IMG/VR virus record: IMGVR_UViG_3300023174_000033
Coordinates: 186,001 to 250,000 of that record
Strand: one strand, 5' to 3'
Length of the DNA: 64,000 nucleotides
The position numbers and the translations under genes were made by a program. Numbering within the stretch: position 1 is the first letter of the stretch; each line of letters starts with the position of its first letter. The notes beneath the pieces were generated by a model. It saw only the letters and a program-made list of their open reading frames with translations. It did no database searches and was not told the DNA's origin. This document shows positions 7,097 through 61,787 of the stretch, in pieces.

Positions 7097-8239
7097 ATGG
7101 GTTGCCCAATTGGACAGAATTCATTATTTTACACCACTACGGATAATTATATAAAATTTCAAAATAGTGATTTAATCGCCATTGAGGGAGTAAATACTGT
7201 TGAAAGACAGATGTTGAGTGGTTTAAAATTCCCATATAAGCAACTTCTCAAGGGAAGAATTGTTTTGAAGGCGGGTCAAGTTAATTACTTACTCAATCAC
7301 CTTGGTATGGGCGATAACGCAACATTTATTTCAATTACTGCTAAATATGATGCTAAATCAAAAGTTGAGGAAGATAATTATGTGAACTGGAGTTTCTATG
7401 ATGATTTAACTAAAGTTTATGCATTTGCTCAATATATGTGTTTGACTGGTAATTCTACCAATAGGGTCAAACAACTTTATTTAACAAATCCCAATCAAAA
7501 TTATCCAGTCATACTTGATGTGATGGTTGCTAATTTAGATGATGCCTATAATTACTTCGGTGATACAATTAATCAATCTGGCACAACATTTACTAATCTT
7601 GTATACACTGATATCAAGAAACACGTAATTGGTGAATCGTTTAAGATTGTGGATGTGAATGGAAAGGCTCTAATTTATATAATTATATCAAATATAGAAT
7701 CAATCCAAATTTCCGATAAAATTTTGACAATAGATGATTCAGCTTTGGGTACAATATTTTTAGCTTTTAAAACGGTAAATGATGCTAAACAAGCTAATTC
7801 AATATTAAATTACCTTTTGGAAAATCCAGATGCTGACATTGATAATTTACCGGAAGATGATGTTAATCCAGTTTTATATTGGTATAGCAATGTTGGCAAT
7901 ACTTCTTCTTATGGTTATGTAACTTTTGATGGAGCAACTGCTGGGCCATATTCAAGTACATATGGAACTACATTTTCAGCAACTATGTCATTAGACATTC
8001 ATGGTACAAATTCAGTGATTACTAAAAATAATTTAATTGAATTATTAATTAGTAATATTTATGATACTAGAGATGGTACTATGTCTCTAACCGGATCCTC
8101 AATAAACCTCACCGGTACATACGGAACTGTGGTTGAACAGATAAATGGAGTTGGTAGTTACTCAATGACCTTTAATCTGATGGATATAGCTGGTAATGGG
8201 CTTGATGGAGTAATTTTAAATTTAACAATAACACCCTAA
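7097..8239 (+). CDS. Putative virion structural protein
   Basis: 380 aa, beta-rich, Ig-like end (DIAGN). AATATATA at 7070..7077. First gene of the fibre operon. Confidence 0.5.
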   Translation: MGCPIGQNSLFYTTTDNYIKFQNSDLIAIEGVNTVERQMLSGLKFPYKQLLKGRIVLKAGQVNYLLNHLGMGDNATFISITAKYDAKSKVEEDNYVNWSFYDDLTKVYAFAQYMCLTGNSTNRVKQLYLTNPNQNYPVILDVMVANLDDAYNYFGDTINQSGTTFTNLVYTDIKKHVIGESFKIVDVNGKALIYIIISNIESIQISDKILTIDDSALGTIFLAFKTVNDAKQANSILNYLLENPDADIDNLPEDDVNPVLYWYSNVGNTSSYGYVTFDGATAGPYSSTYGTTFSATMSLDIHGTNSVITKNNLIELLISNIYDTRDGTMSLTGSSINLTGTYGTVVEQINGVGSYSMTFNLMDIAGNGLDGVILNLTITP

Positions 8240-36202: not shown

Positions 36203-36412
36203 CCCCACAATGAGATTACTTGTGAGTAGTTAATTCGGTTTTCTTTCTTTCAATAAACCTGTGGGGCATCCCCCGTGAAATTAGTCAAACTACTTGGAGC
36301 CTCTGTTACCTAGCTTTATCCCAACGAGACTGGCGTTTAAGGATGTCCAGTCCAATACCCTACCCATTGTTTAAGTCTTGGATTAAAGACTCTGAGTATC
36401 TCTTACTCATTG
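36203..36412 (-). ncRNA. Structured ~210-nt RNA with predicted pseudoknots in the tRNA array
   Basis: GC-enriched, no ORF, at least seven complementary pairs, two of them crossing (see findings). Confidence 0.55.
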
Positions 36413-36483
36413 TTATCCGACAAGGATTCGAACCTCAACTAACTCCGTCAAAGGGAGGTGTGCTACCGCTACACTATCGGACA
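36413..36483 (-). tRNA. tRNA-Gln(UUG)
   Basis: Cloverleaf: acceptor UGUCCGA/UCGGAUA, D arm GUGU-AGCGGUA-GCAC, anticodon loop CU-UUG-AC, T arm UGAGG-UUCGAAU-CCUUG. CCA is not encoded. Confidence 0.92.
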
Positions 36484-36489
36484 ATTTAG

Positions 36490-36558
36490 TGGAGCGTCAT
36501 CTTTCGATTATCCACTTCTGTTACGTTACCCGAAGATAAGAGGCTTTACAGAGCTCCA
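36490..36558 (-). ncRNA. Small (69 nt) structured RNA between two tRNAs
   Basis: Terminal helix UGGAGC/GCUCCA, internal UCUGU/ACAGA, a cUUCGg hairpin and a GAAA-tetraloop hairpin. Confidence 0.5.
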
Positions 36559-36562
36559 TTTG

Positions 36563-36634
36563 TAGTCCCACGGGTAGTCGAAACCCGATTGCCAGGATGA
36601 AAACCTGGATTCCTAACCATTAGAAGATGGGACC
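36563..36634 (-). tRNA. tRNA-Glu(UUC)
   Basis: Acceptor GGUCCCA/UGGGACU, anticodon arm CCAGG-UU-UUC-AU-CCUGG, T arm CGGGU-UUCGACU-ACCCG. CCA is not encoded. Confidence 0.93.
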
Positions 36635-46324: not shown

Positions 46325-46984
46325 ATGAAATATCTCAAGCTTTTTGAAAATTTTGGCACCAATGACACCCTTTATATCTTTGATTTTGATGATACATTGG
46401 TGGATACACCTAGTTTTGAAGAGTTGGCTATACAATATTTGACTGAAAGTCAGAACATTGGAGATTTGATAAAAAGATCTTTACAATTTGTTAATAAAGA
46501 ACAGAAAGACTTGAAGATTGAAAATGGTAGGATATACATTGAAGATCCAAATCAAACTATTGATCCAAAGGGTAATTGGGTTAGAAAGGGGTTGAGAGTT
46601 TATATGGTCACTCCAAACGTTTATCACTTTTTAGATATTTCACTACCGACAAAAGTAAAAGAACTTTCTGAACTATATAAACAAGTCCAAAATAAGTCAA
46701 TTGTAACAGGCAGAATGGTTGACTTGAAAGAAAAAGTAATAGAATCATTGGAAAAATTTGGATTAGAATTACCTAATCATGGTTTGTTTTGTTATCCATC
46801 AAAAGATGATAGAACAGATAGAGTTGCTGAATGGAAAGCTAAAACTATAGTTCAACTTCTAAAAGATACTGGGTTTAAAAAAGCTAAGTTCTATGATGAT
46901 AAACCAAAATGGGTTAAGAAAGTAGTAACAGCAGTAAGAACAGAATTACCAGAGGTTGAATTTGAAGGTATAAGAGTTCATTAA
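46325..46984 (+). CDS. HAD-superfamily phosphatase (RNA-repair-like HAD) with capsid-targeting-like leader
   Basis: FDFDDTL motif I, VTGR motif II, K motif III, FYDD motif IV. N-terminus MKYLKLFENF. Confidence 0.75.
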   Translation: MKYLKLFENFGTNDTLYIFDFDDTLVDTPSFEELAIQYLTESQNIGDLIKRSLQFVNKEQKDLKIENGRIYIEDPNQTIDPKGNWVRKGLRVYMVTPNVYHFLDISLPTKVKELSELYKQVQNKSIVTGRMVDLKEKVIESLEKFGLELPNHGLFCYPSKDDRTDRVAEWKAKTIVQLLKDTGFKKAKFYDDKPKWVKKVVTAVRTELPEVEFEGIRVH

Positions 46985-48474
46985 AGCTCTGCTTCCAAAG
47001 CTTTAATTTCATCCATGACTTTTTTCAATTCCTCTTTTTTCTGCATCATTATCTTTTTATTCTTTTTCCTATCTGAATAAACATCCTTTAACATTTTAAT
47101 AGTTGGTGAATTTCTTTTTCTGAAAACAACACCATTAACACAAACCACATGGTCATCTTTATCAATCTTAGCACCATTATCACAAAATTCAGGATTTTTT
47201 GGATCTCGTACTCCAATAAAATTCTCAGGAGCTATAAACCATTGAATTTGACTTGTTGGGTAAAGCGAAGCGAAGTCATACGTTACGCACCACTGGTTCA
47301 TACCAACAATTGGATCTTTTACCCAACCACCAGCAATACCAACATTTTCCTCAGTATTTTTCTCACCTTTAAAAAGTACTATATTTTCTTGTTCCCTAAA
47401 TCTATTTCTCAATACACCCTCGGTAATTGCCAGCGATGCAAGCGCATTATTCATTTGGGACACAACATCAACAATTTTTATTTGAGCGAGTGATGAAATC
47501 GCATAGATGATTGAGATATAATTTTTAGATTCGTGTATCTTTTGAACAAGAACTGAGTCAACCGCGTTATAGTACATAAATGTTTCAAAATCATCTTCAT
47601 ATAACTTTTGAAGTGAGCCGGCATATTTAATCTTTTCAACCCCCACCAACTTACTTGAAACAAAGTCAAGTGAAGAAGATTCTTTTACTTTAATAGTAGT
47701 ATCACACACTTCATAAAGTTGCATATAATCAAAAATCATTCTATGTGCTGGCATTTCATAATCGGTCATCCATACTTTATTCATTCTTTTTGTTAAGGAT
47801 GAAACAGCGGGGTCAATTTTATATTCCTTACCATTTACTACTTTTTTTAATTTCTTTGCCCTATTAACAAGATACAACCAGTCATAGTTTACAAAGTTCC
47901 ACCCTGTAATCATTGGCATTTTTGGGATCATTTTGTAAAAGAAATTATACATCATGTCAAATTCATCATCATATTTGATATATTTGAACTTGTAATCAGC
48001 ATTGAATTTCTTAAAATACTTATTTGTATTATCTTTTATTCTTTGCTGCATATCTTCGGGCATCTCCCTTAATCCAAGTAGTATGATTTTATCTTCATAA
48101 ACAATTGAAATTGATAAAACTTGAGTTGGGGCCGTTTCGGCATCTGGAAACCCATCAACAATCTCAGTTTCAATATCCACAAAATATATTTTAGGAGTAT
48201 TGTATTCAAATATTTCATTTTTTTCATCATCGGGTAGAGAATCCAAAAACTCATAAATTGAATATCTATCCGGATGGCTTACAGGTTCTAACTTAACTGA
48301 TTTACCATCCCACGATTTAAAGACTTTATGCCTATCGGAATCACTATCATCGCATATTACATACTTCATTGGATTATCCCAATTGTAATATTTCAATTTT
48401 ATATCTCCGGATTTGTCAACGTAACTTACGATTAGTTTTTTACTACTTGAAAGGTATTGGGTATCTACTAACAT
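46981..48474 (-). CDS. Family B DNA polymerase, N-terminal subunit only (3'-5' exonuclease, palm motif A, first finger helix)
   Basis: ExoI DIETE, ExoII GWNFVNYD, ExoIII YNAVD, motif A YDFASLYP. Ends before motif B (K...NS.YG) and motif C (YGDTDS). Confidence 0.85.
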   Translation of the reverse strand: MLVDTQYLSSSKKLIVSYVDKSGDIKLKYYNWDNPMKYVICDDSDSDRHKVFKSWDGKSVKLEPVSHPDRYSIYEFLDSLPDDEKNEIFEYNTPKIYFVDIETEIVDGFPDAETAPTQVLSISIVYEDKIILLGLREMPEDMQQRIKDNTNKYFKKFNADYKFKYIKYDDEFDMMYNFFYKMIPKMPMITGWNFVNYDWLYLVNRAKKLKKVVNGKEYKIDPAVSSLTKRMNKVWMTDYEMPAHRMIFDYMQLYEVCDTTIKVKESSSLDFVSSKLVGVEKIKYAGSLQKLYEDDFETFMYYNAVDSVLVQKIHESKNYISIIYAISSLAQIKIVDVVSQMNNALASLAITEGVLRNRFREQENIVLFKGEKNTEENVGIAGGWVKDPIVGMNQWCVTYDFASLYPTSQIQWFIAPENFIGVRDPKNPEFCDNGAKIDKDDHVVCVNGVVFRKRNSPTIKMLKDVYSDRKKNKKIMMQKKEELKKVMDEIKALEAEL

Positions 48475-52870: not shown

Positions 52871-53053
52871 ATGGAAAATATACTCTCATACGAAGATTTC
52901 ATTACAGAAGGATATAACAAACCAAGAAAGGGTATGAAATCTAGATGGTCTGTTAAATACAAGAAGAAGATAAATTGTAGTAGTCCCAATCTTGGATTTT
53001 CACAAAAGCAATATTGTAAAAGAAAGAGAAAGGGTGGAAAATATAAGTCATAA
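52871..53053 (+). CDS. Small basic protein with capsid-targeting-like leader
   Basis: MENILSYEDFITE/G then WS.KYKK.INC..P..GFSQKQYC. Confidence 0.6.
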   Translation: MENILSYEDFITEGYNKPRKGMKSRWSVKYKKKINCSSPNLGFSQKQYCKRKRKGGKYKS

Positions 53054-53081
53054 AAAAACCCACCAAATTTGGTGGGTTTTT
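53052..53081. terminator. Bidirectional intrinsic terminator (ends the tmRNA and the convergent operon)
   Basis: aaaaaaacccacc-aaattt-ggtgggttttt. Confidence 0.85.
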
Positions 53082-53086
53082 ATTTG

Positions 53087-53437
53087 TGGAGATGCGGGGC
53101 TCCGACTCCCCGGTCTTCCTCGACTAGACCTAAAATATCCTTCACAGACTTAGTCAAGTTTTTCTAAACTGACAAAATATTCAATTTGATTTTACGATTC
53201 TAACTGACAGATAACATCGTGAGTTTTACAGACTCAATACTGTTGAAAACAATTAAGCTACAGAAGCTACCTCGTTTGTCTTGAGGATGTTGTTTTGTAG
53301 GGCAAATACTAATTCTTCTTTGCTAGCTACTTCGTTTGTGTTGCCATTTACAGCTTTGATACCTTATTTAATTGGTCGATATCACCCAATGCCTGCTATT
53401 TTAACCCTACGACGCGAATCAATTCCATTTCATCCCC
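53087..53437 (-). ncRNA. ssrA: Transfer-messenger RNA (351 nt)
   Basis: 5' GGGGAUGAAAUGGAAUUGA; 3' GAC-CGGGG-loop-CCCCG-CAUCUCC-A. Acceptor stem has the G3:U70 alanine identity pair and A73. Internal tag ORF 53345..53253. Promoter at 53450..53457 and a terminator directly downstream. Confidence 0.9.
53253..53345 (-). other. tmRNA tag reading frame (A)GNTNEVASKEELVFALQNNILKTNEVASVA*
   Basis: Resume codon GGC after GUAAAU, inferred by analogy with Bacteroidota tags that begin with Gly. 30 codons to UAA. Confidence 0.7.
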
Positions 53438-53474: not shown

Positions 53475-53915
53475 TTAAAAAGGAAGGTCATCATCAAAAT
53501 CAAAACTTTTTTTACCACTACTTTCTTTGTAGTAAAAATCGAATGTAATCAATGGTTTTTTGTCCTTGGTATACCAAAGGTCCACTGCTGGCTCGTATGA
53601 TACGAGTATATCTTTATGGATTTTTTTCATCAATCCAATTAAGGAAGAAAATGTGGAAAATTTTCTATCTTGTTCTAAAATAAACTCCATAACAAAATCT
53701 TTATCATGGACAGTCACAGTGTAATTCTTTACACCAGAGTTCCTAATCATCTGTCTTATGGTGGAAGCTAAATGTTCAAATGCAACCTTCACCTCATCAT
53801 TATCATCTTCTGTCTCTTGACTTTTGGGAGATAATTCCGAATTGAAGTCAAAGTCAAACTCATCATCTGATTCATCATATTTTTCAAAAGTTCTTATGTG
53901 TTTATTCCAATTCAT
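53475..53915 (-). CDS. Hypothetical protein with capsid-targeting-like leader and SSB-like C-terminal tail
   Basis: N-terminus KHIRTFEKY, C-terminus FDFDDDLPF. Confidence 0.55.
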   Translation of the reverse strand: MNWNKHIRTFEKYDESDDEFDFDFNSELSPKSQETEDDNDEVKVAFEHLASTIRQMIRNSGVKNYTVTVHDKDFVMEFILEQDRKFSTFSSLIGLMKKIHKDILVSYEPAVDLWYTKDKKPLITFDFYYKESSGKKSFDFDDDLPF

Positions 53916-55288
53916 TAGTCGAAGCGAATTTTTATTGTATTTTCACTAAATGAAATACTAGGTTGATATCTATGTTCAGCGAATAACTTTTCTAACATTT
54001 TCACATCGTCATGGAAATCATTTAATTCACCATTTATAATTTCCATACTCATAACAAGTTTACCTTCTTCACTTGTATATTTTATTTGATTATAGGTGCG
54101 CAATCTTCTTGCTTCACCCACCATTCTAGAATACTTTTTGGAAACTTCCTCATCAATTCCAATTTTTCTTTTAACCGATAAACTGTTCCAATTGCAAGAC
54201 ACTGAAGCTTTGCAAAGTTTCTCAAGATAGGTTATATTTTGAGATTCCGAGTTTCTATGTTCATCAAAATACCCAACAGATATATTTGTACATTCTGGTA
54301 CCAAGTCAATAAAGTTTGCTGAATCGGTAAATACTCCAGTTGGGTCTAAATTCAATTTCATCCCATAATTGTTCATCTCATCACAGAGAGATTTAGCAAA
54401 CTCATTTGAGCAACACTGAACCCCCATCTGTTGGGTAATTACTGAAAAATAATTTCTTCTATCAAACGAGACTACTTTCTTTATATCTTTCATGAAAGAG
54501 TAATTTCCATAATTATTAGCAACCGCTCTAGAACCAATACCACCTCTTTCTTCTCCTATGAAGAACCAATAAACACCCGGTACATTGTTGTGGATCATGT
54601 ACATCAATACCGTGACACCAGCTTTGTCATCAGCTCCTAGAATTGATTTACCATCTGTTGCTATAAATGTCTGACCATCTTTCTCAAACTCAATAAGGTT
54701 TATTTCATTCTTTGATCTTGATGCAGTATCAAGGTGGCAAGTGAAAGCTGTATCGGACTTACCTATAACGTGGTAATAGTTACCATGTCCGTCTTTTTTC
54801 AAAAAGTTGGGTAAATACTTAACCACCTCTTCTTCATATCCGTGTGGATAAGTTTCAGTGACTAATGATAAAAATGTGCCTTTTATATCACTTGGGTCAT
54901 ATTGAAACTCTGGTATATCTACAAATTCATATTCATCCCCCTCGTCCTCACCACCGGTATCCAATAATTTATTATATGCGGTAACAAATTTCTGAATTTG
55001 TTCATCTGAAAATTGAGTTCCAAAATAGTTTTTTAAAAATGCGGTTATCCTAACATCTATGTTGTGACCTGATATAGTTACTGTAAACCTACCTTCTTTA
55101 TCCGATAGGTCAACTTTTTCTACACGCATTACGTTCCGGATAGTAGGATTTGAATCCAAGTCGTAAAGGGACCAAGCCACTTCAGAGTTCTGTGTTTGTG
55201 CTAGTTTATCTAACATAATCCAGAAATCATCGGAAAATTTAATTAGTGGATCGGGTTTATAATTTTTCCCCTTTTTATCTTTAGCCAT
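53915..55288 (-). CDS. M28/M20-clan zinc peptidase/amidohydrolase
   Basis: CHLDT, LGADDKAG, GEERGGIGS, SFDRR, FTDS, NISVGY..EH metal-binding motifs. Confidence 0.85.
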   Translation of the reverse strand: MAKDKKGKNYKPDPLIKFSDDFWIMLDKLAQTQNSEVAWSLYDLDSNPTIRNVMRVEKVDLSDKEGRFTVTISGHNIDVRITAFLKNYFGTQFSDEQIQKFVTAYNKLLDTGGEDEGDEYEFVDIPEFQYDPSDIKGTFLSLVTETYPHGYEEEVVKYLPNFLKKDGHGNYYHVIGKSDTAFTCHLDTASRSKNEINLIEFEKDGQTFIATDGKSILGADDKAGVTVLMYMIHNNVPGVYWFFIGEERGGIGSRAVANNYGNYSFMKDIKKVVSFDRRNYFSVITQQMGVQCCSNEFAKSLCDEMNNYGMKLNLDPTGVFTDSANFIDLVPECTNISVGYFDEHRNSESQNITYLEKLCKASVSCNWNSLSVKRKIGIDEEVSKKYSRMVGEARRLRTYNQIKYTSEEGKLVMSMEIINGELNDFHDDVKMLEKLFAEHRYQPSISFSENTIKIRFD

Positions 55289-58362: not shown

Positions 58363-58941
58363 ATGCTTAATCTAAAAGATAATAATTTTTCCTGTATAAT
58401 TTTTGACTTGAACTATGGGGATCTTCCATCTTCCGACCGACTGAAATTAATGGAAAAGGCGACGAGTATACTCTATTCAAAGGAATTTACTGTTTATGAC
58501 TTATTCAGAACAAATCTAGAAAAAACTGAAAAATCTTTATTTGGGGTATCAGAAAATTTGGATAATGAGTCACTTCGCCGAAATGCAATCTATATTCTTG
58601 AGACATTTCATTTGGAAAAAGTTATGGTCAAATATCTCGGTGAAAATAATTACACCGAGATAAAGTCAGATGGTTCAGAATATAGATTTGAGTTAATAAC
58701 TAATATTTTGGACGAAGGAGTTGATAATTATTTTATCAATGGGTTTACATTTAGATTTGAAAGAATGAAAAGATACAATTACCCAAGACTAAAACAAAAT
58801 TTGAAAGCTGGCATGGTTGTGGAATATCTTGACAATAATAATAGATGGAAACAAAAAACTATCGTAGACTTGGAAAAAGAATACAATAGTCTTTATAGTT
58901 TGTTGATAAAATATAATAAACTGAGGTACGAAGTATATTAA
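58363..58941 (+). CDS. Hypothetical protein
   Basis: Start moved to MLNLKDN (58363), 5 nt after AATATATA at 58350..58357. Confidence 0.5.
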   Translation: MLNLKDNNFSCIIFDLNYGDLPSSDRLKLMEKATSILYSKEFTVYDLFRTNLEKTEKSLFGVSENLDNESLRRNAIYILETFHLEKVMVKYLGENNYTEIKSDGSEYRFELITNILDEGVDNYFINGFTFRFERMKRYNYPRLKQNLKAGMVVEYLDNNNRWKQKTIVDLEKEYNSLYSLLIKYNKLRYEVY

Positions 58942-59681
58942 TACTGGTACTTGTTTAAAAATCCGGATCTCGGAACAGTGGTAGATATATGAGTTTGTAA
59001 ATCACTCATAGGGTTACTATAATGTTCTAATATTTTTGAATTTCTTTCAACTAATCCGTTTTCTGGGAATTCAGGTCTATGAAACATATGGAAAGCATAA
59101 AAATCCATTTGCTTATAGTTTAACATTTTTTTAACTTTCATGTCTTGGAACCGGTTTACAAAACCATGTCCGAGTATATCCTCGTTCCATCCACCAATTT
59201 TTTCTATAGCAGTTCTTTTGAAAATAGATATACCATCCGTAAGATTTATTTTTGGAGAGAATCTTTTTTGAGAAAAAATTGTTTGAATATCATTGCTACT
59301 TTCAGGTGGAGAAAGTTGTACAATATTTGAGGTTGGGATGATACATTCGTGAGACTCTAAAGCTTTTAATGATTCAATTAAATCATTCGGATGCATAATT
59401 ACATCTGCATCACCAAATACCAAAACCGGTGACATAGTTCTTCTGATAGCCACATTGTAAGCCCAAGCTTTATTAAAAGGATATTCACTTTCAACAAAAA
59501 TGTGTCTACATTTTAAAGTTAAGGTATCAATTTTAGAATGTTTGTCTTGTTCTACGACAAGTATTTCAATTCCGTTAAAACCACTCAACCATTCTACTAC
59601 TCTTTTTAAAGCGATTACCCTATCAGGTCTGTATCTGAATGGTATAACATAAGTGAATTTGGGAACAACAGTATTTTTCAT
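58938..59681 (-). CDS. GT-A glycosyltransferase (GT2/GT7 galactosyltransferase-like)
   Basis: VIPFR...R, VVEQ, FNKAWAYN, DAD (DxD), GGWNE...G.G, H..H. Confidence 0.8.
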   Translation of the reverse strand: MKNTVVPKFTYVIPFRYRPDRVIALKRVVEWLSGFNGIEILVVEQDKHSKIDTLTLKCRHIFVESEYPFNKAWAYNVAIRRTMSPVLVFGDADVIMHPNDLIESLKALESHECIIPTSNIVQLSPPESSNDIQTIFSQKRFSPKINLTDGISIFKRTAIEKIGGWNEDILGHGFVNRFQDMKVKKMLNYKQMDFYAFHMFHRPEFPENGLVERNSKILEHYSNPMSDLQTHISTTVPRSGFLNKYQY

Positions 59682-59732
59682 TAAATAAAGTTTTTTTATA
59701 TTATATTGATGAAGAATGATTAGTTCTTTTGA

Positions 59733-59924
59733 TTATGATAATATAAGCCCTGGGTTTTTGTATCCACCTTGTTGAGCAATTTCTAACATTTGTGTTGGTG
59801 ATAAATTTTCTTTATCCCATCCTTTTCTTCTAGAGTAGTCCGATATGAATCTCTCTCTTAACATATTTGTATCTTCTTGAGAAAGCTTATCATTCTTGAT
59901 CATTTTTTCGTCGTCGTTTTGCAT
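59733..59924 (-). CDS. Small hypothetical protein
   Basis: 63-aa ORF with a TATATATA-type motif upstream. Confidence 0.5.
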   Translation of the reverse strand: MQNDDEKMIKNDKLSQEDTNMLRERFISDYSRRKGWDKENLSPTQMLEIAQQGGYKNPGLILS

Positions 59925-59949
59925 AAGTTTGATATTTTTTTGTATATAT

Positions 59950-59981
59950 AAAAAAAACCTCCCATTTGGGAGGTTTTTTTT
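59950..59981 (-). terminator. Intrinsic terminator after the major capsid gene
   Basis: aaaaaaaacctccc-attt-gggaggtttttttt. Confidence 0.85.
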
Positions 59982-59996
59982 ATAATCAGTTGAAGA

Positions 59997-61787
59997 TTAG
60001 TTAAGAAGATTCTTGCTATCTACAACGGAGATAGTCATGAATTGCTTCTGTGGATACCAACCAACTTCAGCTACTGCGTATCTTGAACGAAGTAACATTC
60101 TTGGAGCGAAAGTTGCTTCAGAGATAAGGTTGATTGATTGAGCCATTAGATAAGGTACGAAAATGATACCAGGTTGATCAGGATTATTCTTCCTACCAAT
60201 AACAATTCTGTTATCATTATACTTCATAAATGGATCTACATAAATCTGAATATCACCAATTTGACCAACTGGATAGAGTTGACCAGAACCGTTGATTTTA
60301 GATTTGGTTGGGTTAATAGTGTAACCAGCGATATCCATAAGAGCTGCTGCGAGACCTCCATTAGTTACTGCGAATTGAGCAGGTCCAACACGACCCTCAG
60401 TTGCAACGTAGTTAGAAGCATGTACCATTTTAGTGATAAGCTTTCTTTGTACAGCGTGGGTAGTTTCACCAGTAACCGCAGTGCTTGCATATGCGGTGTC
60501 AAGGTCAAAAATAGTGTTAGCTGTAGCACCCGGAGTTCCATATGCAGTCTGTGTTGTCATTAATGGAGCGCTCTTTCTGTTTAGATCACCCATTTCAAAA
60601 ATCTTTGAAACAATTTGCTTGGAGATTGTTTGAGATAGTTCATTCACAAGAATAGATTCCATTTTCTGAACGATGTCCATACCGGTGTTAGCTTTGATGT
60701 CTTCAATTTCAGTCCTTCTAAGAGCAGAAGATACTTCGATAGTACCAACAGCAATTGATTTGGAGGAAATTTTAGGACCGATATTACCAGGATAAGTAGC
60801 ATCATCGTCACTTCTCTTCATTGGATAAGAACCAGCAGCATTTTTGGTATCATCTGGACCACCAGCCCAGTTAGATGAGAAACCAGGGATATGATCTTCA
60901 AGAGCAGAAATTAGTTCAATGTTGGTAGCAGTGATTGACTGTGTTCCAATACATTTAATTTGTTGGAGCATTGAAGATGTAGCACTAGTGAAAGTATTTT
61001 GACTAGGATCAAAAGTATAAGCATATGATGGAGAGTTCACTCTTTCAGAATTAGCTTGTCTGTAAGCTCTGAAAATTGGATATCCATCAATACGAGAGAA
61101 TCCTAAAAATTCTGCAGCACCTCCATAAACTGGATTAGTAACCGAACCAGGATCGGTCTGACTAATTTGTCCTAAACCAGCAGTACTAACTCCAGTACCC
61201 CAGAAATTAGCAGCAGAACCAGTAGCTAATGTTAGCCACATTCTACCACCCTGAAGACCATCAGCAGTTTCTCTTATACCATAAGAGGTAAGGAAAGTAC
61301 GTAGGTGAGCTTCTACTTGATCAGTTGTTAAACCAGTTGAAGCTGTGAGTTTGAATACTTGAGGACGACCAGTTGATCCACCGTTAGCAACATCATCATA
61401 TTGGAAGTCAATATAAAGAAGGTCTAATTTTGGTCCTGGTGAAGGTTTTACAGCTACAAGGTCAAGACCGATAGTTTGAGCAGCAATCTTCATAGCAACT
61501 GGAAGAAGGTTTTGGCCTAAATCTCCAGAACCGAAGTTACCTCTATTGTCATAACTTGTACTAGTTTGTGTTGTTTGGTTAAAACCAGGGTATGCAGATG
61601 GTTGTGGTGAAAGTACACTACCCATACCAGCGATGGTAGCGTTTGCGTAAGCATTTTCATTGATTGAGTGGTACTCCGCATATTCTGACATCCAATCTAG
61701 TCTATCTTCGCCCTCAACACCCATGTTTTCTAAAACAGGTGACCACTTTTTAAGTGCTTTCTGTTTGTCAATTCTAATGTGTGACAT
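59997..61787 (-). CDS. gp23: Major capsid protein, T4 gp23-like
   Basis: KKWSPVLE N-terminus, probable maturation site SINE/N, DLVAVKP..GP, EDIKA..G.D, G..FVPY, TFAPR...RSRY. Flanked by a promoter (61813..61820) and a terminator, downstream of the prohead protease. Confidence 0.88.
   Translation of the reverse strand: MSHIRIDKQKALKKWSPVLENMGVEGEDRLDWMSEYAEYHSINENAYANATIAGMGSVLSPQPSAYPGFNQTTQTSTSYDNRGNFGSGDLGQNLLPVAMKIAAQTIGLDLVAVKPSPGPKLDLLYIDFQYDDVANGGSTGRPQVFKLTASTGLTTDQVEAHLRTFLTSYGIRETADGLQGGRMWLTLATGSAANFWGTGVSTAGLGQISQTDPGSVTNPVYGGAAEFLGFSRIDGYPIFRAYRQANSERVNSPSYAYTFDPSQNTFTSATSSMLQQIKCIGTQSITATNIELISALEDHIPGFSSNWAGGPDDTKNAAGSYPMKRSDDDATYPGNIGPKISSKSIAVGTIEVSSALRRTEIEDIKANTGMDIVQKMESILVNELSQTISKQIVSKIFEMGDLNRKSAPLMTTQTAYGTPGATANTIFDLDTAYASTAVTGETTHAVQRKLITKMVHASNYVATEGRVGPAQFAVTNGGLAAALMDIAGYTINPTKSKINGSGQLYPVGQIGDIQIYVDPFMKYNDNRIVIGRKNNPDQPGIIFVPYLMAQSINLISEATFAPRMLLRSRYAVAEVGWYPQKQFMTISVVDSKNLLN

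What the first reader, a model, noticed from the sequence alone, without database searches (positions are those of the whole stretch)
53087..53437. Phage tmRNA with a 30-residue internally duplicated tag and a non-canonical T loop
Seen: the tag GNTNEVASKEELVFALQNNILKTNEVASVA* contains TNEVAS twice and a buried FAL, and ends SVA. The T loop is 8 nt (AGUCGGAG) instead of UUCRANY, while G3:U70 is intact. No smpB is in the window. Known: most bacterial tags are about 10 aa and end in LAA/AA, which ClpXP reads. Inference: ribosomes are rescued but the tagged proteins may be routed differently or spared, and the altered elbow may evade host nucleases or modification.
Basis: partly seen in the sequence, partly recalled or inferred. 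Interest (0 to 1): 0.62.

Follow-up and report, generated by a model that had tools for sequence, protein, structure and literature searches.

The report
Jumbo-phage tmRNA with odd T loop
A 465-kb phage carries its own working ribosome-rescue RNA (tmRNA) with a long 30-residue tag and a T loop of 8 bases instead of the near-universal 7; the same loop recurs in dozens of uncultured phage tmRNAs that the standard finder misses.

Summary
Window 53437..53087 (minus strand) is a tmRNA: Rfam gives 58 bits, while ARAGORN finds nothing. G3:U70, a covarying PK1, resume codon GGC, a 30-codon tag ending SVA and the 8-nt T loop AGUCGGAG are all present.

"No smpB" holds only for the window. The 464.6-kb phage genome encodes SmpB, ClpP, a ClpC-like unfoldase split by an apparent split intein, and a CCA-adding-type enzyme.

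The tag repeat is real: 14/15 nt at an in-frame offset of 60 nt. Long tags of 21-28 aa are usual among related phage tmRNAs and show a coding-type substitution pattern.

The 8-nt loop is not a one-off. It occurs in 51 distinct tmRNAs from 79 loci, on four compensated T stems. No GenBank phage has it, and only one phage-like scaffold among 185,579 species genomes does. It is scattered among close relatives that have normal loops.

Homing-type nuclease genes (LAGLIDADG, DUF559) abut 8 of 50 genes with the 8-nt loop and 0 of 30 with the 7-nt loop. This suggests, but does not prove, a DNA-level driver.

Verdict: a functional phage tmRNA and a new variant of a known kind. Where tagged proteins go, and how the loop folds, remain inferred.

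The parts
53087..53437 (-). tmRNA gene, from 5' G1 (53437) to discriminator A (53087); 351 nt
   Evidence: Rfam RF00023, 58 bits, E 3.8e-20. It is 93% identical to relatives whose flanking genes are only 70-77% identical at nucleotide level or cannot be aligned.
53431..53437 (-). acceptor stem, 5' strand GGGGAUG (G3 of the G3:U70 alanine identity pair)
   Evidence: Read directly; pairs with 53088-53094.
53419..53430 (-). D-loop analogue containing the conserved GG
   Evidence: Rfam alignment. In group B this segment lies in the pattern used to fetch the loci and does not differ between 7-nt and 8-nt T-loop forms there.
53357..53390 (-). pseudoknot PK1 (stems 48-52/63-67 and 54-60/75-81 in RNA numbering)
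   Evidence: Rfam alignment. Compensatory change U50-A65 to C-G in L028, L036 and L038.
53343..53345 (-). resume codon GGC, 11 nt after PK1 and preceded by UAAAU
   Evidence: Rfam places the consensus resume codon here. L004, L011 and L073 share the UAAAU|GGC context. ARAGORN calls the same frame and start in canonical-loop relatives of L011.
53253..53345 (-). tag reading frame, 30 codons plus UAA
   Evidence: The frame and its length are kept in all six group A variants.
53325..53339 (-). repeat copy 1 (codons TNEVA)
   Evidence: Matches copy 2 at 14/15 nt.
53265..53279 (-). repeat copy 2 (codons TNEVA), 60 nt downstream and in frame
53256..53268 (-). hairpin over the last tag codons, just before the stop
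   Evidence: RNAalifold pair 170/182 changes from A-U to G-C in five relatives.
53114..53252 (-). 3' body: hairpins in the PK2-PK4 region and the 3' strand of the long helix H2
   Evidence: RNAalifold finds H2 (columns 29-47 with 292-316) and compensatory pairs 203/217, 267/286 and 268/285. The Rfam alignment is poor in this region.
53095..53112 (-). T arm: stem CGGGG/CCCCG around the 8-nt loop AGUCGGAG (53100-53107)
   Evidence: Read directly. The same loop sits on 4 compensated stems in 51 distinct tmRNAs.
53088..53094 (-). acceptor stem, 3' strand CAUCUCC (includes U70)
   Evidence: Read directly.
53084..53086 (-). 3' trailer CAA in place of an encoded CCA
   Evidence: None of the phage's 7 tRNA genes encodes CCA, and 5 of them have the same CAA trailer. 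The genome encodes a CCA-adding-type enzyme.
53046..53083 (.). hairpin with U tract, shared as a two-way terminator by the tmRNA and the convergent 60-aa ORF
   Evidence: dG -17 kcal/mol, z -4.3, 0 of 200 shuffles as good.
53915..55288 (-). peptidase-like gene two genes upstream on the same strand
   Evidence: phrog_4191 'peptidase', 229.5 bits. Distant homologues flank group B tmRNAs of both loop types.

Best explanation
This is a working, phage-encoded, one-piece tmRNA.

Inferred pathway. It is transcribed from its own unit and ends at a hairpin terminator. It is trimmed to the discriminator base and given CCA by a nucleotidyltransferase, and the phage encodes one. Host AlaRS charges it with alanine through G3:U70, since the phage has no AlaRS. 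It is delivered with SmpB, which the phage encodes, to ribosomes stalled on broken mRNAs. Translation resumes at GGC and adds Ala plus 30 residues.

The tag. The peptide is itself constrained, so it is probably a recognition signal. Its most likely reader is a Clp-type protease, either the host's or the phage's own ClpC-like/ClpP pair. The result would be freed ribosomes and recycled amino acids during infection. The 30-residue length comes from an in-frame 60-nt duplication or insertion within a family whose tags are already 21-28 residues.

The T loop. AGUCGGAG is a functional alternative to the canonical T loop and keeps the U-C-G core. It is an allele that turns up on different T stems and different tmRNA bodies. 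The most likely driver acts on the DNA: free-standing homing-type nucleases that sit at the 3' end of these genes. The variant T arm would be the uncut allele, or would be co-converted with the nuclease gene. This phage has the allele but no nuclease gene.

Shown: gene identity, structure, conservation, distribution and gene content. Inferred: charging, the protease route, the nuclease targets and the fold of the loop.

The confidence given is for the account as a whole. Its parts are roughly: functional tmRNA 0.85, tag as a signal 0.6, Clp route 0.35, nuclease driver 0.4.
For: Identity and structure: Rfam match over the whole model, a compensatory change in PK1, and three or more further compensated pairs.

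Selection on the RNA: 93% nucleotide identity in phages whose neighbouring genes are 30-76% identical in protein.

Tag is translated: among group B genes with the 8-nt loop, variable sites by codon position are 13, 5 and 17 of 21 each. Length is fixed at 21 codons. There are multi-step synonymous switches. The group A frame is kept in 6 variants.

Partners in the same genome: SmpB at 175.9 bits, above NCBIfam's cut-off; ClpP at 224 bits. The ClpC-like N half matches ClpC structures at E 2e-149, and the C half carries AAA_2, D2-small and an IGF-type loop. There is also a CCA-adding-type enzyme.

Loop is constrained and mobile: 51 distinct tmRNAs on 4 compensated stems. At least 3 changes of loop type are needed on a tree of group B bodies, and at least 2 are forced by well-supported branches.

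Nucleases: LAGLIDADG genes lie 5-15 nt from the tmRNA 3' end in L032, L166 and L185. DUF559 genes lie there in L022 and L031, and in L028, L036 and L038 inside a roughly 960-bp insertion that the window lacks. The tally is 8 of 50 against 0 of 30. The tmRNA T-loop DNA is a published target of intron-borne LAGLIDADG elements (PMC11915505).
Against: No aminoacylation, tagging or degradation was tested.

The tag ends in VA, not in the AA that ClpX-type recognition is known for. No adaptor was found. The ClpC-like gene needs protein splicing that has not been shown; the Intein_splicing hit is below its cut-off.

The nuclease association rests on related, non-independent loci (nominal one-sided p about 0.02). 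The DUF559 hits in group A are marginal, at about 21 bits against a cut-off of 20.6. No cleavage site is known.

The acceptor stem differs on both strands between loop types. A simple 3'-end conversion tract therefore does not explain the mosaic by itself.

The window has no nuclease gene next to the tmRNA.
Confidence: 0.6

Rival explanations
1. The 8-nt loop is an RNA-level adaptation. It would spare the phage tmRNA from a host T-loop-directed nuclease or from TrmA/TruB-type modification, or make it a private substrate for phage factors.
For: The loop sequence is invariant on four different stems and is almost confined to viral sequence. U54 and A58 of the canonical loop are replaced, so the usual m5U54 cannot form (read directly plus textbook tRNA knowledge).
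Against: The phage's own 7 tRNAs keep canonical T loops, so this is not a general escape from T-loop attack. Close relatives with identical tags use normal loops. The D-loop partner does not change with loop type. The phage SmpB is an ordinary SmpB, 75% identical to a bacterial one.
Confidence: 0.25
2. Rescue without degradation: the long VA-ended tag is not a degron, and tagged proteins are spared or merely inactivated.
For: The C-terminus lacks the AA end of most tags. Most common tags are 10 aa (PMC11915505). The Mesoplasma florum long tag largely escapes E. coli proteases (PMC9097571).
Against: The peptide is constrained at the amino-acid level, with an invariant E-V-x-V-A end in group B. 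That is unexpected if any stop-terminated frame would do. The phage also invests in ClpP and a ClpC-like unfoldase.
Confidence: 0.2
3. Decoy: the RNA titrates SmpB, AlaRS or EF-Tu and blocks host trans-translation, as reported for the tag-less tmRNA-like RNA of mycobacteriophage DS6A.
For: There is a precedent, cited in PMC11915505. The abnormal T loop could impair passage through the ribosome.
Against: PK1, the resume context, a 30-codon frame and a stop are all kept, and the tag shows a coding pattern. The phage adds SmpB instead of depleting it.
Confidence: 0.06
4. The true resume codon is GCA, one base downstream, which would give a 5-residue tag ATQTK.
For: GCA is the commonest resume codon, and the +1 frame is open for 5 codons.
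Against: Rfam aligns the consensus resume codon to GGC. U(-5) and A(-4) fit GGC. In group B the codon-position pattern fits the GGC frame. ARAGORN calls the equivalent frame in canonical relatives.
Confidence: 0.03

Closest known systems
Standard one-piece bacterial tmRNA (SsrA; Rfam RF00023) with SmpB
   Same: Acceptor stem with G3:U70, a D-loop analogue with GG, the long helix H2, PK1 placed 11 nt before the resume codon, a tag frame ending in UAA inside a helix, and an SmpB partner.
   Different: The T loop is 8 nt (AGUCGGAG), not the 7-nt UUCRANY type. The tag is 30 aa and ends in VA. CCA is not encoded. The PK2-PK4 region fits the model poorly. The gene is carried by a phage.
tmRNA and SmpB genes reported in huge phages (Al-Shayeb et al. 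2020, PMC7162821)
   Same: A phage genome over 200 kb that carries tmRNA, SmpB and other translation genes.
   Different: That survey called tmRNAs with ARAGORN only. ARAGORN finds 0 of 22 of the 8-nt-loop genes tested here. That paper describes neither a T-loop variant nor tag features in the passages read.
Mesoplasma florum SsrA tag (27 aa, ends AFA) read by Lon (PMC9097571)
   Same: A long tag with a non-AA end that is routed to a protease other than ClpXP. It even shares the pentapeptide NTNEV with the window's tag.
   Different: The phage has no Lon but has ClpP and a ClpC-like unfoldase. The NTNEV match may simply reflect the composition of A-rich codons. No homology is claimed.
Mobile elements that target the tmRNA T-loop DNA: group I introns, some with LAGLIDADG genes (PMC11915505), and free-standing phage homing nucleases beside tRNA genes (T4 SegB, from memory)
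   Same: Nuclease genes of the LAGLIDADG type are associated with the T-arm end of the tmRNA gene, and the alleles are distributed patchily among relatives.
   Different: There is no intron here. The nuclease genes are free-standing, 5-30 nt beyond the 3' end. The loop itself is altered, not interrupted. Targets are untested.
Mycobacteriophage DS6A tag-less tmRNA-like RNA (cited in PMC11915505)
   Same: A phage-borne tmRNA relative.
   Different: DS6A's RNA lacks a tag frame and inhibits the host system. This RNA keeps a constrained tag frame.

Membership tests
tmRNA (RF00023) | Score at or above Rfam's gathering threshold over the full model | tested here: met
   58 bits against 47, model positions 1-374.
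tmRNA (RF00023) | tRNA-Ala-like acceptor stem with G3:U70 and discriminator A | tested here: met
   GGGGAUG/CAUCUCC followed by A.
tmRNA (RF00023) | Canonical 7-nt T loop (UUCRANY) | tested here: not met
   The loop is the 8-nt AGUCGGAG. The same holds in 51 distinct relatives. The U-C-G core is kept.
tmRNA (RF00023) | Pseudoknot PK1 just upstream of the resume codon | tested here: met
   Two stems, a compensatory change from U-A to C-G, and an 11-nt spacer.
tmRNA (RF00023) | Tag reading frame with no start codon that ends in a stop and is kept in relatives | tested here: met
   30 codons in six variants. A coding-type substitution pattern in the sister group.
tmRNA (RF00023) | Tag ends in a hydrophobic Ala-rich degron (xLAA or xAA) | tested here: not met
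   The tag ends in SVA (FVA in relatives).
tmRNA (RF00023) | SmpB partner available | tested here: met
   The phage SmpB scores 175.9 bits against the NCBIfam equivalog.
tmRNA (RF00023) | Aminoacylation with alanine and tagging of non-stop products | not testable with these tools
   This needs biochemistry or mass spectrometry.
Homing-endonuclease-linked allele (intronless homing) | Nuclease gene present or absent among close relatives, directly beside the variant site | tested here: met
   A roughly 960-bp insertion carrying a DUF559 ORF is in L036, L028 and L038 but not in the window, L006 or L027. LAGLIDADG genes lie 5-15 nt from the 3' end in three lineages.
Homing-endonuclease-linked allele (intronless homing) | The nuclease cuts the canonical allele and spares the variant | not testable with these tools
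   This needs an in vitro cleavage assay.

The most novel reading that the evidence does not exclude
A near-universal RNA tertiary motif, the 7-nt T loop, has been replaced in a whole set of phage tmRNAs by one specific 8-nt loop that still supports trans-translation. The replacement spreads between phages because selfish homing nucleases cut the normal allele. Beyond that, the phage may run a partly private rescue-and-degradation line made of its own tmRNA, SmpB, a VA-ended degron, and an intein-assembled ClpC with ClpP.
Probability: 0.3. Interest if true: 0.8.

Novelty: new variant of a known kind. Interest (0 to 1): 0.66.

Why it matters
The T loop is among the most conserved features of tRNA-like molecules. 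It is read by RNase P, modification enzymes, EF-Tu and the ribosome. A natural, recurrent 8-nt substitute under clear purifying selection offers a test of what the elbow really has to do in trans-translation.

It also exposes a blind spot. ARAGORN-based surveys of phage and metagenome tmRNAs miss this class entirely.

If the nuclease link holds, it would be a clean case of selfish DNA reshaping a functional RNA.

The long conserved tags, together with a phage-borne Clp system, could supply orthogonal degrons for synthetic biology, as the Mesoplasma tag and Lon pair already does.

Tried and rejected
- ARAGORN on the window and on all 8-nt-loop loci found no tmRNA. It also misses 16 of 30 canonical relatives, so the loop is not the only reason for failure.
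- blastn of the whole tmRNA and of two T-arm ends against 50,697 GenBank phages gave no match.
- The SmpB search in five other 8-nt-loop contigs found none. They are 10-53% complete fragments, so this is uninformative.
- The tmRNA of the likely host lineage could not be fetched. The host tag and T loop therefore remain uncompared. The Bacteroidota tag recalled from memory was not found in the paper library.
- RNAalifold misfolds the T arm and D loop of the group A alignment. Folding the T arm without the 5' acceptor strand gave an artefact. Neither result was used for the T arm.
- Lon and AlaRS are absent from the phage genome.
- A link between loop type and tag ending (VA or AA) was considered and rejected. 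Tag type follows the body lineage, not the loop.
- Complex prediction, structure prediction and the large representative protein search were not used. No claim here depends on them.

Full report
**1. Is it there?**

Rfam's tmRNA model matches window 53437..53084 on the minus strand from end to end (58 bits, gathering score 47, E 3.8e-20). ARAGORN reports only two tRNAs in the window and no tmRNA.

Read directly, the RNA has these features:
- It starts GGGGAUG and ends CAUCUCC-A, which gives G3:U70 and discriminator A.
- The T stem CGGGG/CCCCG encloses the eight bases AGUCGGAG, where the model expects seven.
- The frame opening at GGC (53345-53343) runs 30 codons to UAA.
- The gene is followed by CAA, not CCA, and then by a strong hairpin terminator (dG -17 kcal/mol, z -4.3).

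The coordinates and every sequence statement of the finding are correct.

**2. Context**

The window is bases 186001-250000 of a 464,605-bp virus record that CheckV rates 98% complete, so "phage" is right. "No smpB" is true only of the window. The genome encodes:
- an SmpB that passes NCBIfam's equivalog cut-off (175.9 bits);
- a cellular-type ClpP (224 bits);
- a CCA-adding/PcnB-family nucleotidyltransferase;
- a two-ring ClpC-like unfoldase encoded in two halves 48 kb apart.

The N half of the unfoldase matches ClpC structures at E 2e-149. It stops right after the second Walker A GVGK, followed by a short Cys-initiated tail. The C half begins with about 130 Hint-like residues ending HN|T. 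It continues with AAA_2, D2-small and an IGF-type ClpP-docking loop. This looks like a split intein, but splicing is not shown.

Lon and AlaRS are absent. None of the seven phage tRNA genes encodes CCA, and five share the CAA trailer. The tmRNA therefore follows the phage's own 3'-end convention.

The phage SmpB is 75% identical to a chromosomal SmpB of a Catalimonadaceae MAG and 61% identical to one from Chryseosolibacter. This points to a Cytophagales (Bacteroidota) host. That host assignment is an inference.

**3. Is the RNA functional?**

Five close relatives (L006, L027, L028, L036, L038; 92-94% identical) keep the whole architecture.
- PK1 shows a compensatory change from U50-A65 to C-G.
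- RNAalifold finds further compensated pairs, including A170-U182 to G-C in the hairpin over the last tag codons.
- In the same phages the flanking genes are only 70-77% identical in DNA or cannot be aligned, and 30-76% identical in protein.

The tmRNA is therefore the most conserved element of the locus.

**4. The tag**

Resume at GGC is supported by four observations. Rfam places its consensus resume codon there. The spacer after PK1 is 11 nt. The upstream UAAAU is shared with other phage tmRNAs. ARAGORN makes the same frame call in canonical-loop relatives of L011. The +1 alternative (GCA, five residues) is not supported.

The internal repeat is real. Two 15-nt stretches match 14/15 (17/19 when extended) exactly 60 nt apart and in frame, and at most 1 of 2000 shuffles does as well. 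Removing one repeat unit would leave a 10-residue tag. However, the sister lineages already have tags of 21-28 residues. The published range is 8-35 (PMC8012679) and the commonest length is 10 (PMC11915505). Length alone is therefore unusual for bacteria but ordinary for this phage group.

In the best-sampled sister group (B, consensus GNVLNKMETLGLVRGSEVTVA), the members with the 8-nt loop vary at 13, 5 and 17 of 21 first, second and third codon positions. Length is constant, there are multi-step synonymous changes, and the E-V-x-V-A end is invariant. That is the signature of a translated, constrained peptide. It also shows that tmRNAs with the odd loop are being used on ribosomes.

Who reads the tag is unknown. 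The VA end differs from the AA end that ClpX-type recognition is known for. The phage's own ClpC-like/ClpP pair is a candidate, and the Mesoplasma tag and Lon pair is a precedent for re-routing (PMC9097571).

**5. The T loop**

*Distribution.* An exact scan for the T arm in IMG/VR returned ten contigs, all carrying tmRNAs. The 20-mer scan of metagenomes returned 24 loci.

In one representative genome for each of 185,579 species, the 20-mer occurs in a tmRNA only once. That hit is on a 28-kb, 37.6% GC scaffold with phage-family genes, binned into a Desulfobacteraceae MAG. This scan covered only the CGGGG-stem form of the T arm, so bacteria carrying the loop on another stem would have been missed.

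A loop-centred scan raised the total to 79 loci and 51 distinct tmRNAs. The loop is invariant and sits on four Watson-Crick-compensated stems: CGGGG/CCCCG, GAGGG/CCCUC, GCGGG/CCCGC and GUGGG/CCCAC. No GenBank phage has it.

*Mosaic pattern.* Retrieval by 5' body sequence avoids fishing with the T arm. It shows that close relatives carry either loop type. Group B has both, and group D is canonical except for L011. On a tree of group B bodies with the T arm and acceptor stem left out, loop type needs at least 3 changes, and well-supported branches alone force at least 2.

The long tag and the 8-nt loop are separable traits. L073-L075 have 26-residue tags and normal loops.

*RNA-level clues.* The phage's tRNAs have normal T loops, and the D-loop partner does not co-vary. 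The loop keeps U-C-G, the equivalents of positions 55-57. It replaces the 54 and 58 positions and adds one base. How it folds cannot be settled with these tools.

**6. A possible driver**

Nuclease genes sit directly after the 3' end of several 8-nt-loop genes:
- homologous single-motif LAGLIDADG genes, 5-15 nt away, in L032, L166 and L185;
- DUF559 (Vsr-like fold) genes in L022 and L031 (27-32 bits);
- DUF559 genes at marginal score in L028, L036 and L038, where the gene lies in a roughly 960-bp insertion absent from the window, L006 and L027.

Homologues occur beside 8 of 50 distinct 8-nt-loop genes and 0 of 30 7-nt-loop genes within 2 kb. The nominal one-sided p is about 0.02, but the loci are not independent. 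The tmRNA T-loop DNA is already known as a target of group I introns, some of which carry LAGLIDADG genes (PMC11915505).

A reading that fits these facts is that the variant T arm is the uncut allele, or is co-converted with the nuclease gene. It would be tolerated because it still works as RNA. Two weak points remain. No cleavage data exist. The acceptor stem also differs on both strands between loop types, so a simple 3' conversion tract is not enough.

**7. Comparison and novelty**

tmRNA and SmpB in huge phages are known (PMC7162821), but that survey used ARAGORN. According to its methods, the 2025 tmRNA database picked its main candidates with ARAGORN and BLASTN (PMC11915505). ARAGORN finds 0 of 22 of these genes. 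I found no description of an 8-nt T loop in tmRNA in the library searched. That is absence from a limited library, not proof of novelty.

I file the gene as a tmRNA, because most defining features are met. Two features are tested and not met: the canonical T loop and the AA-type tag end. It is therefore a new variant of a known kind.

**8. Verdict**

- Core claim, a functional phage tmRNA working with its own SmpB: about 0.85.
- The tag is a recognition signal, not a neutral frame: about 0.6.
- A Clp route for tagged proteins: about 0.35.
- A nuclease-driven origin of the T-arm mosaic: about 0.4.

Noticed in passing
outside the window: G000:C1 about 169694-171184 (+) and 120909-122102 (-); loci L204 and L102: A ClpC-like two-ring unfoldase is encoded as two halves 48 kb apart on opposite strands. 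It is broken exactly at the D2 Walker A motif (GVGK|C... and ...HN|T), with Hint-like sequence on the C half. This is an apparent split intein with a very short N fragment. The C half starts right after a tRNA-Cys gene.
   Followed up: partly
outside the window: G000:C1:357252-357911 (-), 58901-60070 (-), 7306-7764 (+): The phage encodes a cellular-type ClpP, a CCA-adding/PcnB-family nucleotidyltransferase and SmpB. It has no Lon and no AlaRS.
   Followed up: yes
L004 2518-2925, L008 1132-1539, L007 6857-7268, L009, L012: GOLLD RNA (RF02032, up to 319 bits) lies about 150 nt from the tmRNA 3' end in L004, L008 and L012, and farther off in L007. All these group B phage contigs also carry tRNA genes.
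   Followed up: no
window 53915-55288 (-); L013, L019, L141, L138, L145, L151: A peptidase-like gene (phrog_4191, 229.5 bits) lies upstream of the tmRNA. Distant homologues of it, and separate ORFs with Pfam M20/M42 peptidase hits, recur beside tmRNA genes of both loop types. This synteny may bear on peptide recycling.
   Followed up: partly
whole genome; window 36412-36634 for two of them: None of the 7 phage tRNA genes encodes CCA. Five of them, and the tmRNA, have CAA right after the discriminator, which may be a shared processing signal.
   Followed up: partly
two of the ORFs listed, downstream of 8-nt-loop tmRNAs (loci not identified individually): Two ORFs just downstream of tmRNA genes hit ATE_C (arginine-tRNA-protein transferase C-terminus, best E 3e-09). 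This is an N-degron pathway enzyme sitting beside a degradation-tag RNA.
   Followed up: no
L016 (scaffold JASFHE010000010.1): This 28-kb, 37.6% GC scaffold is binned in a Desulfobacteraceae MAG. It carries an 8-nt-loop tmRNA, a tRNA, many small ORFs on one strand and phage-family hits. It is probably a phage contig or a prophage.
   Followed up: partly
window 53256-53345 (-): The tag shares the pentapeptide NTNEV with the Mesoplasma florum SsrA tag printed in PMC9097571. This may be chance from A-rich codons near the resume site.
   Followed up: no
window 46981-48474 (-): A 497-aa ORF has a family B DNA polymerase exonuclease domain (48 bits) but no polymerase domain in the same ORF.
   Followed up: no
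L005 1880-2089: Rfam's tmRNA_permuted model just reaches its threshold (47.8 bits) overlapping a one-piece tmRNA. That tmRNA's 13-residue tag (ANDNAFAPVAQAA) looks alphaproteobacterial, judging from memory. The same tag type occurs on a 444-kb contig (L024).
   Followed up: no
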